Assembly: GCF_000315625.1 (NCBI RefSeq)
Contig: NW_005434548.1
Coordinates: 49,696 to 94,844, forward strand
DNA: 45,149 bases
Origin: Guillardia theta CCMP2712
Taxonomy: Eukaryota; Protista; Cryptophyta
Direction of reading: 5' to 3'
A program made the position numbers and the translations under genes. Positions 9,538 through 45,149 of the stretch are shown piece by piece (positions within the stretch are counted from its first letter, which is position 1; the number at the start of each line of letters is the position of its first letter). The notes beneath the pieces were generated by a model. The model was not told the DNA's origin and did no database searches. It saw nothing but the letters and a program-made list of their open reading frames with translations.

Positions 9538-12103
9538 TCACGAAGTGATCTCCTTTCCCAGCTCGACATCTGAACAGAACCCGGAAGCGTCAGTCACGTG
9601 ACCTGCACGTTGTCGCTCCGTCAAGCTTCTCACCTTGCACCCCCTCGTTGGACACCGTCTTGGGCCCCTTCTGCTCCTCCTCCTTCTCTTCCTGCCTGCT
9701 CTGACCCCTGCTGTGTGAGGGCAAGCTTGTCAGCTGCTGCTGCTGAGAAGGAGGAGGAGGAGGTGATGGTGGTGGTGTAGAGGAGGAAGTGTAGAGCAGG
9801 CAGAGTAGAGGAGGTGGAGGTGGAGAAGATGGAGGATGAGAGGTGGTGGTGGTGGTGGTGGTGGTGCAGGTGGTGGTGGAAGAGGAGCAGGAAGTTGTTA
9901 TACCGGGCCCAGCGCACCGCCAGGAAGGTCAAGCAGAGGACGACGAAGGCGATCAAGAATCCGAAACCAACCCAGGCAGCAGCTGAGATTTTCCTCTTGG
10001 ACTTGTCCGGCTCGTAGAGGTCAGCTGGGGTGTAGCTGACGACCCAGCGGGAGAAGTGATCGGTCTCGACGGAGATGGTGGAGCCATAGACTTTGGAACC
10101 TTTCTGAGAGAATAGGAGTGAGGAGAGGAGGATGAGGAGAAGGAGATGGAGGAGGCGGTGGTGGTGGTGGTGACGGAGTAGGAGTAGGAGTAGGAGTAGG
10201 AGTAGGAGTAGGAGTAGGAGTAGGAGGATAGAGAAGATGGAAGAGGAGGAGAAGGAGTAGGAGGAGGAGGAGGAGGTGGTGGTGGTGGAGGAGGAGGATG
10301 AAGAGGAGGTGGTGGTAGTAGTGAACGGGGAGGAAGAGCATTCAAGTACCTGCTCCTTCCATGTCCTAGTAGCATCGTCGAAGTAGAGCACTTGGAGCTG
10401 GATCGATTTCCCTTGCAGCATCTCGGGGGGAAAAGCGAAGGTGAAGTTGAGGGTGACAGGCTTGAGGAAGCGAGCACCATGGGGGGAGAGTTCGAACAGC
10501 TGCGAGCATGGGGTGCCTTGTGTCTTCCTGCTGAGAAGATAAGGAAGGAGGAGGAGGAGGAGAAGAAGAAGGAGGAGAAGGAGGAGCAGGAGCAGGAGAA
10601 GGAGACAGAGGAGGAGAAGCAGGAGGAGGAGGAGGAGGAGGAGGAGGAGGAACAACGATGTTGGTGCGATGAAGTAAGGCAGCAGCAGTAGCAGTAGCAG
10701 TAGCAGTAGCAGCAGCGCCAACAACATTGACAAGAGAAGGAGGAAGAGGAGGAAGAGAGGGAGGGAGAGAGCAATCTCGTCAACCTGTCCTCTGCTGGAA
10801 CGCTATCGAGCGTGAAGGCCTCGAGCATGATGGTCTCTTGGGAGGACAGCGCGTTGGGAGGGATGACTATCCACTGATGATCCCGAAGAGACACCTGCAG
10901 AAGGCAGTAAATCGAAAGGACCTCCTCCTCCTCCTCCTCCTCCTCTCCCTCCCTCCCTCCCTCCTCTCCCCTCCTCTCCTTTCGTCTCGTCTCATGTCTC
11001 TCTCCTCCTCTCCTCTCCTCTCCCCTGCTGCCACTACCTTTCCGCCCGCGGAGCCTACAACGGCGGAGGAGGCGATGGAAGGCTTGAGGGCAACTTCACA
11101 CTTGGACCCGAAACGACGAGGGAGGCAGGAACATGTTCCCTCCTCTCCCTGCCAGCCTGTCGGCAGGCAAGACTGACAGCTGTCTCAGTAGAGGCTAGGA
11201 AGATGAAGGAGGGTGGAGGTAGATGAGGAGGAGGCAGGCGGGAGGACGAGGAAGAAAGGAGGCGGAGGAGGAAAGGGAAAACATGAAGATGTCAGCAGTG
11301 AGGAGAGAGGAAGAGATGAGATGAGATGAGATGAGATGAGATGGGATGGGATGGGATGAGATGAGATGAGATGAGATGAGATGAGATGAGAGGAGATGAG
11401 AGGAGCAAACAAGCAGCATACCCTGACACTTCCAGTCCTCCGCATGAACTCGTTCTCACACAGTAACAGGCACTTCTCTCCATCCTCTTTCTTCTGCGTG
11501 TGGCAGCTGGACGGGACGTACGACCCCATGGGCTGCTTCGGGAGTGGCAGACAGGAAGCAGGGACGTGCTCGCATCTGTCTCCTGCTCGAGGGGAGGGGC
11601 AGGAGCAGGTGAAACCTTTGCGAGCTCCTGTGTTGACACAAGTGCCTCCGTGCGAGCAGGGGTTGGGGAGACAAGGATGGCAGAAGAAACCTGAGAGGAC
11701 GAAGACAAGTGAGATGGTGATGGTGGTGACGAGGATCAAGATGATGATGATGAGGAGGAGGATCAAGAAGAGGAGGAGGTGGTGGTGGAGATGAAGGTGG
11801 AGGAGTAGAGGAGGAGACAGAGTAGAGCAGCAGAGGAGCAGAGGAGGAGGAGGAGGAGGAGGAGGAGGAGGAGGAAAGGGGGAGGGGGGGGGGAGGCTAA
11901 CCGGCCATGACAAGAAGGTCCTTGTTGACATTCTCACAGTCTAACCTGCATTTGACAAAGAGAAAGACAGAAGTCAAGAGAACAAAATCATCAATGAGAT
12001 GTAGAGGTAGAGAAGATGGCAGAACCGAGCATTAGAAACAACACGATAAAAACAACCAAAAATATAACACCTCATCGTCATCGTCATTGTCTTCTTCATC
12101 ATC

Positions 12104-12139
<36 letters not shown>

Positions 12140-15100
12140 GTCGTCGTCGTCGTCGTCATCGTCATCATCATCATAACCCTAGCATCTTTCAGACTCATCC
12201 TCTCAGTCTCTCAACCTGTCCGGACAGGCCTCAGCTTCCTTGTCCGTCCAGTTTGCCGGGTTCTCCCCGACCCGCAGGCCCTCGAGCCCGGGAGTCCGAG
12301 CAAAAAGAGCAGAGCAGTTCTTTCCGTAGGAGTGAAAGATAACCATCCTCTCGTTGTAGTTCGTCATGTGAGCTGAGAAATCTGGCCGCTCTCCTACATC
12401 CACCCTTCTTCCCGTACCTGGGATCCCCACCTGATCCCTCACCTGGCACGTGAGGTTCCGAGTCCCCCAACAGCTCTCCCCCGGTGTCGTGCAGGCCAGG
12501 TTCAGCTGGGCAGGAGCTGGAGGAAGAGGTTGTTCGTCTTCCTTGCAGGCATCGTCCACCTGGATGTAGTTGACTTCCTTCGTCAGCGCGTTGACGAACC
12601 AGAGCCGGCAGGAGGCATCTTGCCCGCTGCTGCACTGGAGCTCAAGGCCGGTCACTCCAGCTGACCCCGTGCTGAACTCCCCAGGGTCTTCCCAGCTCGG
12701 TCGAAGGCGACGATCCTCCCCGTGTCATAGTCCGAGACGAAGAGGCGACCCTGAGGCGAGAGCGCGAGGCCTGAGGGAGACTGAAGGGAGGAGGTGAAGA
12801 CCTGGGTCACCTGGTAAGAAACGCTCCCTGTCGACCTCTCCTCTCCCCTCCTGCTCTTGCTCTCCCCTGCCCTGCCCTGCCCTGCCCTGCCCTGCCCTGC
12901 CCTGCCCTGCCCTGCCCTGCCCTGCCCTGCCCTCTTCTCCTCTCCTCCTCACCTCACCTCACTCTCCTCCCCTCCCCTCCCCTCCCCTCTTCCCCCCTCC
13001 TCTCCTTACCTCAAACTCGGTGCATCCCCACAGCTCGTACTCGAACGAGTCGCTCGTCTCCGTGAAGGTCGTGTAGCAGCCCAGCCCGTCCTCCATGGCG
13101 CACGGCCCTCCCCGACACCATCCTGATGACGTCATCGGACCAAGACGGGAGAGCAAAAGACGAAGACGAGGAGGGAGGAAGCAGAGGAGGAGGAGGAGGA
13201 GGAGGAGGAGAGGTAGATGAGACAGCAGAGGAGGATTAGTTGGAAGAAGCAAATACAGGATACAGAGAGCGTTCCAGTGAGTAAGGGACGGGGACGGCCA
13301 GGAGGAGGTGGTGCTGCAGGAGGAGGAGCAGAACAAGGAGCAGAGCGAGGAGGAGGAGGGAGGAGGAGAAGGTGCTGCAGCAGCTGCTGCAGGAGGAGGA
13401 GGAGGAGGAGGAGGGCGGATCGCTCTGCTTCTTACCAGCCTCGCAGTTCATGTTGCAGATGTCTGGTCGGCATCCCGTGGCTGTTCCTCCACAAGTGTCG
13501 CTGGACTGACCCTCACAGAATTGCTCGCATTGCGACCTGAAGCACGAGAGTGAGAGAGTGAGAGTGAGAGTGAGAGTGAGAGGGAGGGAGGGAGGGAGGA
13601 AGGGAGGGAGGGAGGGAGGGAAGGTGAGAGGGAGAGAGTAGGGAAGGGCGAGGAGAGAACAAGGGAGGGAAGAGAGAAGGAGTGACATGCAAACGAGAAG
13701 AAGAGAGGGAGTAGACGAAGGAAGAGGGGTAGAGGGTAGAGGAAGGAGGAGGGGTAGGTTCAGCATGTCTAGCACTTGTTCTGGTAGGTAGTCGATCTAT
13801 TTGTGCCGCATGTCCATCTGGAGTTGTGATTCCAGAAACATTCGTCCGGCACACACATCGCTCCTCGAAAGAACTTCCCGCTGTCCGCGTTCACCCGCAG
13901 CACCCGCTTCCCACCTGTTTCCCCCTCCCCACCGTTAGAAGCTGCGCAGGCTCAACGGACCTCCTTGTTCTCGTCCTCGCATGATTTCTCCCTTCCTCTC
14001 GCCACCACCACCACCACCACCACCACCTCCTCCTCCTCCTCCTCCTCCCCCTCCTCACCAGTGTCAGCAACGTAGACATGCCGCGCCTCCGCGTCGACCA
14101 CTATGTGGCCGGGGACGTCTGAGCAAAGAGGTGAGGGGAGGAGGAGGAGGAGGAGGAGGAGGAGGAGGAGGAGGAGAAGGAGGAGGTCTCGGCGAGTACC
14201 GGCGCGACGGCTGATGTCAACATCGACGTACCGACGGATGTTGGCGAAGCGATGATCCATGACCTTGACACCATGCAGAGAGTCCTACATGCCACTTGCT
14301 GTCAGTCTCGCCCTCTTGTCCAAGTTTGACATCCTCTTTGTCAAACTTTCACATCCTCGTCAGTTCTCACTTACCATGTCAAATCGCATTAACTTGCCCC
14401 TCACGCCGTCCACATACCAGACGATGTTCCCTGGGACTCTACTTCTGTTCTGTACGGGAACGTTGAGGCGTGTTGGTCCTGTTGTGGCCTGAAGAGCTCA
14501 AGTCAGAGAGGGCAGGAAGACGTAGAAGATTGAGGGTTGACAAGTGCAACAAACTCGAGCACAAGCTGCGTCAGGCTCTACCTTGCTGTCATGGGCGATG
14601 CCAGTGCATAGAGGAGACTCGTGAAGCATGTCGGAGTGGATGACGAAGCACTGGGACGCCCCCTCGGAGCCAGGAGTGCAGTGGCTGCCGTCATGCGATA
14701 CCATTTGGTTGTCGCAGCCTCCTCCTTCCTTCATCTTGCCATAGCCCCCCTCGCAAGGATAGACTTCGAATGCGCTCGGGCCCTGGAAGTAGTTGGGCCC
14801 CTGCGACCCCGCGTACGTGTTGGTGCTCTCCTGGCAAGTGAAGACAACCTTTCCTTGCTTGTCGAAGGATAGAGCCGCAATATTGTCCATGTAGTGGTAC
14901 GCGGCGCGATCTCGCACTGTGAACGACCTCTGGTCCTTAGTGCCTGCGTTCTCAATGACGAAGAGCCCGCTCGACGTCGCGTCTTTCTTGTCCGCGCTCG
15001 CTACCCAGAGCTCGTTGGGTCTCATAGGATGGAACTGAATGTCTCGGGGGGTAGCGAGGCCTTTCGTGCTGCTCGCTACTGTCACGATCGTTCTTGCGGA

Positions 15101-15217
15101 GCCAAACGGGGGGACGCAAGAGGAACTGGCGCGGGGGAGGGCATGAAGGAGGAGGAGGACGAGAGACAGGACGAGGCTCTCGCGCCATATCTTGCTCGCT
15201 GCGCCCAGGGACAACAT
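9538..15217 (-). CDS. Type I membrane receptor-like protein: signal peptide, NHL/beta-propeller, Cys-rich insert, EGF, CCP/sushi-like, ZU5 with HFS motif, TM helix, short tail
   Basis: N-terminal hydrophobic signal (LVLSLVLLLLHALPRASS). Propeller blades GLATPRDIQFHP..NELWVA, VPGHIVVDAEARHVYVADTGGKRVLRV and LQSPSGLALSPQGRLFVSDY. EGF CLPNPCSHGGTCVNTGARKGFTCSCPSPRAGDRCE (~11570-11680). ZU5 VVGSAGGKVSL..IVIPPNAL...FELSPHGARFLKPVTLNF...VETDHFSRW. TM AWVGFGFLIAFVVLCLTFLAV. Stop at 9538. About 17 exons; one apparent frameshift at ~12680. Confidence 0.8.
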
Positions 15218-28944: not shown

Positions 28945-30710
28945 TTAGGTACAGATGGAGTAGATCACTTGGAAGACGAGATCCGCGACTTCATACCTAC
29001 TGCTGATCTCTGCTTCNNNNNNNNNNNNNNNNNNNNNNNNNNNNNNNNNNNNNNNNNNNNNNNNNNNNNNNNNNNNNNNNNNNNNNNNNNNNNNNNNNNN
29101 NNNNNNNNNNNNNNNNGGAGGGAGGGAGGGCTACCTGCGGTTGAATTTTTGCATTGGCCACCAGTGTCCGTCGGGCTGTGATGCTGAAGGCTGATCCATC
29201 CAGATCAGTGACCTGCAAACAAAAGGAAAGTGTCAGATCCAGGCAGGAATCGGGGGAAAAAGGAAGGCGGAAGGAGAAGAGAAGAGAGGAAAGCAACGAG
29301 GAGAGAGTAGAACGGATCGTTGGAACGAGGGGAGGGCGGGTGGGAGGAGGAAGAGAGAGAAGGAGGAGGAGATGAAATGTAGCGGGGCAACAAGGATAGG
29401 AATCGTGCTCTTCACCACTGCTCCTGCCTCTGTGCAGATCAAGAAGGCAGCTGCGACATCCCAAGGATGCATCCCCCATTCGTAGTAACTGAGGAAGGGA
29501 GGGAAGGAGCCGTCAATGGCAGCATGCAGCTGCAGGATCGAGTTCCTACCCATCCACGTTCCCAGAAGCGACCGCGCACATGTTCAGGGCACAGGAGCCA
29601 AGACAACGGAGCTGCTTGCAAGTTCAGCAGCAACGAGGCCGAAACAAACGGTCGAAATCACCGCCTGGACTGGGCTCTGAATGACCTTGTGCATAATGTC
29701 CACCTTCTTCTGCACGACCTCAGGGTCTCTGTTCGCCCCGAACTCCGTGCAGATGCAAGCAGAAGGCATGTCCTCGACCTGGGCTGCGTCATCCTCCGTG
29801 CTTCCCCGCTCACTCTCCTTCCCTCACCTGGGAGGGAGAGATCTTCTCGTCGTTCATGAAGGCTCCTTTGCCGCGGACAGCCTTGTACATCTCCTGGGTG
29901 ACCTGCCAGTCAAGGCTCAAGGAGCTTCTTCGAGCACAAGACGAGGGGTTGTACTGGATTGAACACAACGCCCACCATTGGCATCTTATCCACGACAAGT
30001 GCAACACCTGTACGTTCCTTCACCTCGAAGCATCACAGCCCATCCTGTTCGAGACTCACTGACACAAGTCCACTGCAGTCCATGCACGAAATTTGCAGTC
30101 CCGTCGATAGGGTCCACAACCTGTAAAGGCAAAAAGTGAGGAACTAAGAGGTCGCAGCTACGGATGGAGGGACCCAAGTGGGATCGTCGCTAAGGTTGTA
30201 ACTGCCCTCGAACGATTCTTCACCTAGAAACTTGTGCGTCCTGAAGGTACCCAGTCACACGGGAACGTTCAAGGGCATTGGACTGACGGGAAATGTTTGG
30301 CAATGAGGGCCCGGAGGAGGTCCTCGCAAGCGAGATCGACCTCCGTCACAGGATCAGTCAGAGACTTCTTCTTGTTCACAACATCCCTGCCGGGCGAGTC
30401 ACAAGACACGTTCATCGAGAGGGGAAGGAGAGGAGGGAGGGAGGGAGGGAGGGAGGGAGGGAGGGAGGGAGGGAGGGAGAGAGGGAGAGAGGGAGGGAGG
30501 GAACGGGGCGGGTTTGGTGGAGGAGGGGAGTGCGAAGGCTTTCAAGCGTACTTCCTAAAGCTCTTCAGGATCAGCCCTCCTGCTCCCTTCGCCCCTTCGA
30601 TCGCAACTTGAAGGGCGAGGTCAAGATCCACTTCCTGTAAACTCCCTGTCACGTCCCATTCTATGTAGAGCCAGATTAGATACCTTGGTGGCTTCTTCAG
30701 CAGCAGACAT
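28945..30710 (-). CDS. IMPA1: Inositol monophosphatase; multi-exon
   Basis: Exons encode DPVTEVDLACE, HFP..HKFLGEES, PTW|VVDPIDGTANFVHG, GVVFNP|VTQEMYKAVRGKGAFMN, CTEFG, YYEWGMHPWDVAAAFLICTEAG and VTDLDG. The last exon lies beyond a 100-N gap. Confidence 0.93.
29017..29116. other. Assembly gap (100 N)
   Basis: N run. Confidence 1.
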
Positions 30711-37814: not shown

Positions 37815-38663
37815 NNNNNNNNNNNNNNNNNNNNNNNNNNNNNNNNNNNNNNNNNNNNNNNNNNNNNNNNNNNNNNNNNNNNNNNNNNNNNNNNNNNNNN
37901 NNNNNNNNNNNNNNNNNNNNNNNNNNNNNNNNNNNNNNNNNNNNNNNNNNNNNNNNNNNNNNNNNNNNNNNNNNNNNNNNNNNNNNNNNNNNNNNNNNNN
38001 NNNNNNNNNNNNNNNNNNNNNNNNNNNNNNNNNNNNNNNNNNNNNNNNNNNNNNNNNNNNNNNNNNNNNNNNNNNNNNNNNNNNNNNNNNNNNNNNNNNN
38101 NNNNNNNNNNNNNNNNNNNNNNNNNNNNNNNNNNNNNNNNNNNNNNNNNNNNNNNNNNNNNNNNNNNNNNNNNNNNNNNNNNNNNNNNNNNNNNNNNNNN
38201 NNNNNNNNNNNNNNNNNNNNNNNNNNNNNNNNNNNNNNNNNNNNNNNNNNNNNNNNNNNNNNNNNNNNNNNNNNNNNNNNNNNNNNNNNNNNNNNNNNNN
38301 NNNNNNNNNNNNNNNNNNNNNNNNNNNNNNNNNNNNNNNNNNNNNNNNNNNNNNNNNNNNNNNNNNNNNNNNNNNNNNNNNNNNNNNNNNNNNNNNNNNN
38401 NNNNNNNNNNNNNNNNNNNNNNNNNNNNNNNNNNNNNNNNNNNNNNNNNNNNNNNNNNNNNNNNNNNNNNNNNNNNNNNNNNNNNNNNNNNNNNNNNNNN
38501 NNNNNNNNNNNNNNNNNNNNNNNNNNNNNNNNNNNNNNNNNNNNNNNNNNNNNNNNNNNNNNNNNNNNNNNNNNNNNNNNNNNNNNNNNNNNNNNNNNNN
38601 NNNNNNNNNNNNNNNNNNNNNNNNNNNNNNNNNNNNNNNNNNNNNNNNNNNNNNNNNNNNNNN
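37815..38663. other. Assembly gap
   Basis: N run flanked by (GGGA)n repeats. Confidence 1.

Positions 38664-38988: not shown

Positions 38989-45149
<6,161 letters not shown>

What the first reader, a model, noticed from the sequence alone, without database searches (positions are those of the whole stretch)
9538..11160. Juxtamembrane ZU5 domain ending in H-F-S: a candidate self-cleaving receptor
Seen: the spliced exons give a full ZU5 fold (VVGSAGGKVSL..IVIPPNAL; FELSPHGARFLKPVTLNF; VLYFDDATRTW) ending in VETDHFSRWVV, about 25 aa before a single TM helix and a ~47-aa tail. Known: PIDD1 ZU5 domains autoproteolyse at HF|S, as does Nup98, and adhesion-GPCR/polycystin GAIN-GPS domains cleave at HL|T/S just outside the membrane. 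Animal ZU5 domains (UNC5, ankyrin, PIDD1) are cytoplasmic. Inference: here the ZU5 is extracellular and placed like a GPS site, suggesting a sheddable or mechanosensitive two-piece algal receptor built on ZU5 rather than GAIN.
Basis: partly seen in the sequence, partly recalled or inferred. Interest (0 to 1): 0.85.

Follow-up and report, generated by a model that had tools for sequence, protein, structure and literature searches.

The report
Membrane-proximal self-cleaving-type ZU5 domain, Guillardia
A cryptophyte alga (Guillardia theta) encodes a single-pass membrane protein whose outer part ends, right at the membrane, in a bacterial-type ZU5 domain that keeps the His-Phe-Ser self-cleavage motif, so it is probably cut into two pieces held together like adhesion-GPCR or mucin-type receptors; the cut itself is untested.

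Summary
Minus-strand exons 11172-11038, 10894-10785, 10527-10350 and 10103-9904 splice (all GT..AG) into a complete ZU5 domain. It scores above the Pfam ZU5 cut-off. With an alignment, the AlphaFold model matches ankyrin ZU5 crystal structures best (VIA-align Z 11-12.4). The domain ends in H-F-S (10058-10050), 23 residues before one transmembrane helix and a 36-42 residue tail.

The gene is Guillardia theta GUITHDRAFT_118361, which UniRef already names "ZU5 domain-containing". The annotated model is truncated at its 5' end:
- A canonical EGF module lies in frame upstream of the annotated Met.
- One exon, encoding the first ZU5 strand, is skipped.

EGF next to ZU5, with no membrane span between them, places the ZU5 outside the cell.

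They are 31-34% identical and carry the same "SVET.HFS.W" motif. Extracellular autoproteolytic ZU5 domains, and ZU5-GPS homology, were proposed for bacteria in 2012.

In the model, HFS sits in the turn between the last two strands. By end-of-range arithmetic it falls on the BAI3 GAIN scissile bond.

I rate this a new variant of a known kind, of moderate interest.

The parts
11422..11690 (-). Exon I: a canonical EGF module (residues 4-41 of its translation) followed by a Cys-rich stretch. The annotated start Met (11529) lies inside this exon.
   Evidence: Acceptor ctctcag|G at 11690 and donor AGG|GTATGC at 11422. phmmer against PDB hits Notch1 EGF repeats at E 1.5e-12.
11038..11172 (-). Exon E1 (45 aa, phase 0/0), absent from the public model. 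It holds the end of the Cys-rich module and the first ZU5 strand with the GG motif (VVGSAGGK).
   Evidence: AG/GT borders. Including it raises the score against a bacteria-only ZU5 HMM from 52.7 to 62.7 bits and extends the alignment to the 'IGaaGG' strand. There is a weak laminin-EGF hit.
10785..10894 (-). Exon E2: ZU5 strands (VSLRDHQWIVIPPNAL...).
   Evidence: It aligns to ankyrin and ZO-1 ZU5.
10350..10527 (-). Exon E3: the ZU5 core (FELSPHGARFLKPVTLNF ... VLYFDDATRTW).
   Evidence: On its own it hits Pfam ZU5 (E 0.0069) and only ZU5 chains in PDB. ESM Atlas feature search gives 0.93 to a ZU5 cluster.
9904..10103 (-). Exon E4: the last two ZU5 strands with the HFS turn, a 14-residue linker, the transmembrane helix and the start of the tail.
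10050..10058 (-). His-Phe-Ser codons (CAC TTC TCC). The predicted scissile bond is Phe|Ser.
   Evidence: The motif is in register with HFS of bacterial ZU5 lipoproteins. It sits in a two-residue turn between strands 117-124 and 127-134 of the model, where the 10-residue block has pLDDT 93.
9915..9983 (-). Single transmembrane helix (AAAWVGFGFLIAFVVLCLTFLAV).
   Evidence: Kyte-Doolittle maximum 2.75. It is helical, with pLDDT 80-90, even in the single-sequence AlphaFold model.
9538..9710 (-). Cytoplasmic tail exons. Annotated model: 9707-9634 plus 9569-9538 (36-aa tail). Alternative: 9710-9590 (42-aa tail). The 9710/9707 acceptor is a NAGNAG pair.
   Evidence: No Pfam family matched the tail at E <= 1.
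12203..15217 (-). Upstream same-strand exons: signal-peptide-like start (Met 15217) and an NHL-type propeller region. They are annotated as a separate 512-aa gene and may be the N-terminal part of the same protein.
   Evidence: NHL repeat PF01436 at 27.1 bits. Annotation layout. Phase-compatible donors at 12418 and 12226 fit acceptor 11690. The join is unproven.

Best explanation
This is a type I membrane protein of Guillardia theta. Its ectodomain (at least EGF plus a Cys-rich module, possibly also the upstream NHL propeller) ends in a bacterial-type ZU5 autopeptidase domain placed 14 residues above the membrane.

The conserved His-Phe-Ser turn most likely undergoes cis-autoproteolysis, as in PIDD1, Nup98, NLRP1/CARD8 and GPS sites. 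The Ser hydroxyl attacks the Phe carbonyl (N-to-O acyl shift) and the ester is then hydrolysed. That would cut the protein into two pieces:
- an ectodomain fragment ending ...VETDHF;
- a stub starting SRWVVSY, followed by the helix and a 36-42 aa tail.

The stub's first strand would remain inserted in the ZU5 sandwich, so the two pieces would stay together non-covalently until force or ligand pulls them apart and the ectodomain is shed.

Shown here: domain identity, motif conservation, its position in the fold, and the extracellular context. Inferred: the cleavage, the two-piece state, the shedding and any signalling.
For: - ZU5 by sequence: Pfam above its cut-off, and only ZU5 chains among the seven best PDB hits.
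- ZU5 by structure: the AF2 model built with a 30-sequence alignment has pLDDT 77.5 and pTM 0.72. The 16 Foldseek PDB hits at E <= 0.001 are all ankyrin ZU5. VIA-align gives Z 11-12.4, then GAIN domains at Z 7.9-9.4, NLRP1 at 8.8 and UNC5b at 7.6.
- The ESM Atlas's own model of P0001 has PIDD1, UNC5, UNC5CL and bacterial ZU5/SpvB-Rhs clusters as structural neighbours, TM 0.59-0.67.
- Motif: tblastn hits chosen without the motif (Thermus, Allomeiothermus, Deinococcus plasmid lipoproteins) carry SVET.HFS.W in register.
- Of 42 further metagenomic or bacterial relatives, 41 have a [HSG]FS motif: 38 HFS, 2 GFS, 1 SFS. This matches the HF|S of PIDD/Nup98 and the SF|S of CARD8/NLRP1 (PMC3210808).
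- HFS lies just before a long beta strand at the end of ZU5, as that paper describes for the cleaving proteins.
- Range arithmetic puts S126 of the model on BAI3 S857, the residue after the scissile bond.
- Extracellular context: an EGF module lies in frame upstream, the helix follows, and the bacterial relatives are lipoproteins (lipobox-like start in 25 of 42).
Against:
- The protein is an orphan. No other eukaryotic relative appeared in three protein searches, so conservation within eukaryotes cannot be assessed.
- Part of the motif statistics is biased. The 29 genome loci were fetched with a pattern containing HFS, and the word-indexed searches may favour motif words.
- In about 17 of the 41 bacterial relatives with the motif the protein ends only 6-7 residues beyond the motif Ser. 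Cleavage there would free only a heptapeptide, so the motif might be conserved for folding rather than for catalysis.
- Some positions nearly invariant in the bacterial set differ in Guillardia (D after HFS is R; Q in 'YQD' is F).
- No UPA or Death domain, and no signalling domain, follows.
Confidence: 0.55

Rival explanations
1. The domain is a non-cleaving ZU5: a structural stalk or binding module next to the membrane, like the ankyrin, UNC5 and ZO-1 ZU5 domains. The HFS turn would be kept for folding (buried Phe anchor) or simply inherited from the bacterial donor.
For: The best solved-structure matches are the non-cleaving ankyrin ZU5 domains. Many bacterial relatives end 6-7 residues beyond the motif Ser, where cleavage seems pointless. 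BAI3 keeps an uncleaved GPS in its crystal (PMC3321182). His is only partly needed in Nup98 (PMC3210808).
Against: Ankyrin, UNC5 and ZO-1 lack the H-F-S triad (UNC5b has Leu at the Phe position). Here the whole triad is kept across Deinococcota, Bacteroidota, Myxococcota and the alga at about 30% overall identity. Every ZU5 protein named with an [HS]FS site in the papers read here (PIDD, CARD8, NLRP1) and Nup98 cleaves there.
Confidence: 0.25
2. The annotated 233-aa model is right: translation starts at Met 11529 without a signal peptide. The ZU5 would then be cytoplasmic, as in animals, anchored by a C-terminal helix.
For: It is the public gene model. Charges flanking the helix are positive on both sides, so they do not fix the orientation.
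Against: - The annotated Met lies inside a Cys-rich module. A canonical six-Cys EGF module (E 1.5e-12) is in the same frame and the same exon just upstream, after a good acceptor.
- The model skips an in-frame exon that supplies the first ZU5 strand (+10 bits).
- The closest relatives are exported lipoproteins.
Confidence: 0.07
3. The locus is a silent or decaying relic of a bacterial gene transfer and makes no functional protein.
For: No RNA holder was found. It is a single-copy orphan with no eukaryotic relatives. The introns are full of microsatellites.
Against: The frames are open across at least six exons with canonical GT..AG sites. The alignment to the bacterial profile runs through three splice junctions without breaks. 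Codon-usage scores are positive in the coding frame only. Introns inside the domain argue for long residence under selection.
Confidence: 0.1

Closest known systems
Bacterial surface or lipoprotein ZU5 autopeptidase domains (Zhang, Aravind et al. 2012, PMC3482391). Here: about 430-520 aa lipoproteins of Deinococcota, Chitinophagaceae and Myxococcota, e.g. Thermus oshimai WP_015065240.1
   Same: They give the best sequence match: 31-34% identity over about 140 aa and blastp E 5e-15 to 4e-12. They share the 'SVET.HFS.W' end motif, sit outside the cytoplasm, and are predicted to process themselves at the cell surface.
   Different: In bacteria the ZU5 is N-terminal, behind a lipid anchor, with the cargo C-terminal. 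In Guillardia it is C-terminal to the ectodomain and followed by a membrane helix, so the fragment that would be released is the opposite one. The Guillardia gene has spliceosomal introns inside the domain. Cleavage by the bacterial proteins is itself a prediction.
PIDD1 / UNC5CL / NLRP1-CARD8 FIIND (autoproteolytic animal ZU5)
   Same: Same fold (Atlas TM 0.59-0.65, TM 0.76 to a Death-domain ZU5 cluster). Same [HS]-F-|-S site at the end of ZU5, before a long strand (PMC3210808).
   Different: The animal proteins are cytoplasmic, are followed by UPA and Death or CARD domains, and act in cell-death and inflammasome signalling. None of these domains is present here.
GAIN domain / GPS site of adhesion GPCRs and polycystin-1
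   Same: The autoproteolytic turn lies between the last two strands of a beta sandwich just outside the membrane. VIA-align gives Z 7.9-9.4 to the CD97, BAI3 and BAI2 GAIN domains, with the last strand in register with the cleaved strand. The predicted outcome is the same: a non-covalent two-piece membrane protein.
   Different: There is no helical subdomain A, no GPS Cys/Trp pattern and no Pfam GPS hit. The site reads HF|S, not HL|T/S. One helix follows instead of 7 or 11, and there is no evidence for a tethered agonist.
SEA domain of membrane mucins (MUC1 type, G|SVVV)
   Same: Functional analogy only: a membrane-proximal self-cleaving module in a single-pass protein that gives a sheddable ectodomain (from general knowledge, not tested here).
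   Different: It is an unrelated fold with a different motif. No SEA hit appeared in the Pfam scan.

Membership tests
ZU5 domain (Pfam PF00791; ZU5 fold) | Match to the family HMM above the curated cut-off | tested here: met
   24.1 bits against a cut-off of 21, E 4.4e-5, profile positions 20-81 of 97, on P0001, which lacks the first strand.
ZU5 domain (Pfam PF00791; ZU5 fold) | Beta-sandwich fold that superposes on solved ZU5 domains | tested here: met
   Foldseek: the 16 hits at E <= 0.001 are all ankyrin ZU5, E 5e-5 to 8.5e-4, TM 0.55-0.63. VIA-align Z 11.1-12.4, rmsd 2.4-4.0 A over 117-129 residues for eight of nine entries (5.4 A over 137 for the ninth).
Autoproteolytic ZU5 (PIDD1, UNC5CL, NLRP1/CARD8 FIIND) | [H/S]-F-S triad at the C-terminal end of ZU5, directly before a long beta strand | tested here: met
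   HFS at model residues 124-126, between strands 117-124 and 127-134. The description of the site is in PMC3210808.
Autoproteolytic ZU5 (PIDD1, UNC5CL, NLRP1/CARD8 FIIND) | Ser-dependent self-cleavage shown experimentally | not testable with these tools
   This needs expression of wild type and the Ser-to-Ala mutant.
Autoproteolytic ZU5 (PIDD1, UNC5CL, NLRP1/CARD8 FIIND) | ZU5 followed by UPA and a Death-fold domain, in the cytoplasm | tested here: not met
   No UPA, Death, CARD or FIIND hit at E <= 1. A membrane helix follows 23 residues after the Ser. EGF upstream implies an extracellular position.
Bacterial cell-surface ZU5 autopeptidases (PMC3482391) | Closest sequence relatives are exported bacterial ZU5 proteins with the same end motif | tested here: met
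   tblastn E 5e-6 to 3e-3. Alignment at 31-34% identity with SVET.HFS.W. Bacteria-only HMM scores 62.7 bits.
Bacterial cell-surface ZU5 autopeptidases (PMC3482391) | Encoded in a bacterial genome, at the N-terminus of a surface or toxin protein | tested here: not met
   The gene lies on a 198-kb Guillardia theta nuclear scaffold. Three GT..AG introns split the domain. The ZU5 is C-terminal to the other modules.
GAIN domain / GPS | GPS sequence motif (Pfam PF01825) and helical subdomain A | tested here: not met
   No GPS hit at E <= 1. The domain has about 150 residues, all beta apart from short turns.
GAIN domain / GPS | Scissile turn between the last two strands, immediately outside the membrane | tested here: met
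   Model 1-135 aligns to BAI3 704-866, with L856|S857 as the site. This rests on range ends, not on a residue-by-residue alignment.
GAIN domain / GPS | Followed by a 7TM or 11TM body | tested here: not met
   There is one hydrophobic helix and then a 36-42 aa tail to the stop codon.

The most novel reading that the evidence does not exclude
A cryptophyte captured a bacterial surface ZU5 autopeptidase and placed it next to a membrane helix. That would create, independently of animals, a two-piece adhesion or sensor protein that works like a GAIN/GPS or SEA receptor: force- or ligand-driven loss of the ectodomain exposes the SRWVVSY stub, which then signals or is processed further. It would be a living intermediate supporting the proposed descent of GPS-type membrane-proximal cleavage modules from bacterial ZU5 domains.
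Probability: 0.15. Interest if true: 0.8.

Novelty: new variant of a known kind. Interest (0 to 1): 0.55.

Why it matters
If the cleavage is real, this would be, as far as my searches show, the first eukaryotic case of an extracellular, membrane-proximal ZU5 autopeptidase. It would be a simple single-pass counterpart of the GAIN and SEA modules, and a concrete link between bacterial surface ZU5 domains and eukaryotic self-cleaving receptors. It is cheap to test (Ser-to-Ala mutant, N-terminal sequencing), and the bacterial relatives offer an even easier test bed for a prediction that has stood untested since 2012. It also shows that the public gene model is truncated and lacks an exon. Its weight is limited: it is one orphan gene without expression data, and both the domain call and the concept are already in databases or the literature.

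Tried and rejected
No RNA-seq test of splicing was therefore possible. I sent no reference covering 10728-10775 to any search tool afterwards. The whole window was used only inside local scripts.
- The metagenome scan with exon E3 found no relative.
- Exhaustive phmmer with E3 against 1.84 billion representatives found only the protein itself, plus two repeat-rich proteins of no evident relation (P0002, P0003).
- The search for homologous proteins with P0001 found only itself.
- The single-sequence AlphaFold model was poor (pLDDT 48.6), and its Foldseek hits were meaningless. I discarded both.
- The search for related loci with alignment A1 failed because no stretch was conserved enough. I repeated it with A2.
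- NCBIfam gave nothing useful.
- A second RNA-run search with exon E4 alone found no RNA holder. The small shares seen in metatranscriptomes therefore do not come from E4.
- I considered donor 12418 as the join from the upstream gene. The stretch it would remove scores as coding, so the join remains open.
- A Sushi/CCP reading of the Cys-rich stretch across the exon I/E1 junction was made by eye only. I could not test it, because the spliced sequence has no reference.
Full report
**What is there.** The window is nuclear DNA of the cryptophyte Guillardia theta CCMP2712 (scaffold JH993090.1). The protein search returned the window's own product as GUITHDRAFT_118361, 233 aa, which UniRef names "ZU5 domain-containing". 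The gene is on the minus strand and has microsatellite-rich introns. I rebuilt the public model exactly from window exons 11529-11422, 10894-10785, 10527-10350, 10103-9904, 9707-9634 and 9569-9538, all with GT..AG borders.

**The public model is incomplete in two ways.**
- Its start Met (11529) lies inside exon I (11690-11422). The first 40 residues of that exon, in the same frame and behind a good acceptor, are a canonical six-cysteine EGF module. It hits Notch1 EGF repeats at E 1.5e-12.
E1 encodes the "VVGSAGGK" strand. With E1 the protein scores 62.7 bits against a profile built only from bacterial ZU5 domains, against 52.7 bits without it. The alignment then reaches the "IGaaGG" first strand of the family, and it runs unbroken through the E1/E2, E2/E3 and E3/E4 junctions. 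This is comparative support for the splicing, but it is not RNA evidence.

**Is it a ZU5 domain?** Yes.
- Exon E3 alone gives a weak Pfam ZU5 hit, and its only PDB sequence hits at E <= 10 are ZU5 chains.
- P0001 passes the Pfam cut-off, 24.1 bits against 21. Its seven best PDB sequence hits are ankyrin and ZO-1 ZU5 domains.
- The ESM Atlas holds its own model of this protein. Its structural neighbours over residues 30-176 are PIDD1, UNC5, UNC5CL and bacterial ZU5/SpvB-Rhs clusters (TM 0.59-0.67).
- A single-sequence AlphaFold model was useless.
- With a 30-row alignment (A3) the model reached pLDDT 77.5 and pTM 0.72.
- Foldseek then gave 16 PDB hits at E <= 0.001, all ankyrin ZU5. Behind them came the GAIN domains of BAI2, BAI3 and CD97, then UNC5b, ZO-1 and NLRP1.
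- VIA-align gave Z 11.1-12.4 for ankyrin ZU5, 9.4 for CD97, 8.8 for BAI3, 8.8 for NLRP1 and 7.6 for UNC5b.
- An Atlas shape search gave TM 0.64-0.76. The best row (0.76) is an animal Death-domain/ZU5 cluster. The others are mostly bacterial clusters, two of them carrying Pfam ZU5.

A tblastn of the domain against plasmids, made without any motif, found lipoproteins of Thermus oshimai, Allomeiothermus silvanus and Deinococcus aetherius (E 5e-6 to 3e-3). They start with a lipobox (…LLGAC) and carry an N-terminal ZU5. They align to the Guillardia domain at 31-34% identity, including "RTLSVETRHFSDW" and "RTVSVETNHFSTW" against the alga's "STISVETDHFSRW".

A pattern scan of bacterial genomes then fetched 29 more members from Deinococcota, Chitinophagaceae and other Bacteroidota, and Myxococcota. 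HFS in those 29 is there by construction of the pattern.

Two further searches found 42 short and 41 longer metagenomic or bacterial relatives, and no eukaryote other than Guillardia. Of the 42 short ones, 41 have a motif: 38 HFS, 2 GFS and 1 SFS. The remaining one appears truncated at that point. Phe-Ser is thus kept in every relative that has the motif region, and the position before it takes the residues known from PIDD/Nup98 (His) and CARD8/NLRP1 (Ser). One caveat: the word index may favour motif words.

**Where the motif sits.**
- In the model, HFS (residues 124-126, that is P0001 148-150, window 10058-10050) forms the two-residue turn between the last two strands, 117-124 and 127-134. 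The 10-residue block holding it has pLDDT 93. D'Osualdo et al. place the cleavage motif of CARD8, NLRP1 and PIDD in the same position: at the C-terminus of ZU5, just before a long strand, with the Phe buried (PMC3210808).
[quoted passage not shown] In BAI3 it is L856|S857 (PMC3321182).
- VIA-align pairs model 1-135 with BAI3 704-866. Since 135-126 equals 866-857, Ser126 falls on Ser857 if the last strand is ungapped. This is an inference from range ends, not from a residue-level alignment.
- After the last strand come 14 residues (ADLYEPDKSKRKIS), one helix (9983-9915) and a tail of 36 or 42 residues that matched no Pfam family at E <= 1.

**Topology.** Charges beside the helix do not decide the orientation. 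The argument is therefore the EGF module, a disulfide-bonded module typical of secreted and extracellular proteins, directly upstream with no hydrophobic span before the ZU5. The exported bacterial relatives agree with it.

How the protein begins is open.
- The annotation places a separate 512-aa gene upstream (window about 15025-12203). It holds an NHL repeat and, from Met 15217, a signal-peptide-like start.
- Donors at 12418 (strong) and 12226 (weak) have the phase that acceptor 11690 needs. However, the stretch that the strong donor would remove scores as coding.
- An ATG at 11928, followed by a microsatellite-encoded hydrophobic run, could instead start a separate gene.
- Either way the EGF and the ZU5 end up outside. 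Only the annotated start would allow a cytosolic ZU5, and it cuts a Cys-rich module in two.

**How it probably works.** Self-cleavage at Phe|Ser by an N-to-O acyl shift would give an ectodomain fragment and a membrane stub. The stub's first strand would stay in the sandwich, so the result would be a non-covalent two-piece protein that can shed its outer part. I put this at about 0.55 overall: the domain identity is near certain, the extracellular position is likely, and catalytic competence is plausible.

Doubts remain.
- There are no expression data.
- The gene is an orphan among eukaryotes.
- In about 17 of the 41 relatives with the motif, the protein ends only 6-7 residues beyond the motif Ser, so cleavage there would free just a heptapeptide. 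The motif may therefore also serve folding.
- Nothing suggests that the tail signals. "Receptor" and "mechanosensitive" are guesses.

**Comparison with what is known.**
- Zhang, Aravind and co-workers (2012) united ZU5, GPS and the Nup98 autopeptidase in one superfamily.
- I found no paper on ZU5 in Guillardia. The one other paper that turned up for ZU5, algae and transmembrane, a cnidarian pattern-recognition-receptor study, was not read.
- What appears new is the context: a eukaryotic, intron-bearing, single-pass membrane protein with the domain just above the membrane. Compared with the bacterial lipoproteins, it is the opposite piece that would be released.

**Verdict.** This is a new variant of a known kind, of moderate interest (0.55), with a simple decisive experiment.

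Noticed in passing
window 11422-11690 and 11038-11172 (minus strand): The public gene model GUITHDRAFT_118361 starts at a Met inside a Cys-rich module, leaves a canonical EGF module untranslated just upstream in the same frame, and skips an in-frame 135-nt exon. By eye, the Cys/Trp spacing across the exon I/E1 junction (…SVR|SCLPTGWQGEEGTC…) looks like the end of a Sushi/CCP module.
   Followed up: partly
proteins P0008-P0045: Many small bacterial or metagenomic ZU5 lipoproteins (about 190-210 aa) end only 6-7 residues beyond the motif Ser (…TDHFSGYLLAE). Self-cleavage there would free only a heptapeptide strand. What that would achieve is unexplained.
   Followed up: partly
L002, L003, L004 (Thermus, Deinococcus, Allomeiothermus plasmids): The ZU5 lipoprotein gene sits in a similar neighbourhood on all three plasmids: a cupin-domain gene upstream on the same strand. 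A BTAD transcriptional regulator is nearby in two of them and a tail-fiber-domain protein in one.
   Followed up: no
window 9707-9710 (minus strand): There is a tandem NAGNAG acceptor (cacag|CAG|GGG) at the first tail exon. The two choices differ by one Arg. A further strong donor/acceptor pair (9634/9569) is used in the public model and changes the last residues of the tail.
   Followed up: partly
Atlas shape search, rows 1, 6, 8 and 10: ZU5-like folds (TM 0.70-0.73) appear in clusters without a ZU5 annotation: molluscan 'Protein DD3-3-like', bacterial metallophosphoesterases, thioredoxin-domain and DUF11 proteins. This hints that the fold is wider than Pfam ZU5 shows.
   Followed up: no
window 11690-11937 (minus strand): An intron-like microsatellite stretch stays open in the EGF frame. 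From an ATG at 11928 it would encode a poly-Pro run and then a 30-residue Leu/Ile run directly before the EGF module. It is either an intron or an odd signal anchor.
   Followed up: no
window 29017-29116, 37815-38663, 41948-42945: Assembly gaps (runs of N) in the window.
   Followed up: no
I sent no part of it to any search tool afterwards.
   Followed up: no
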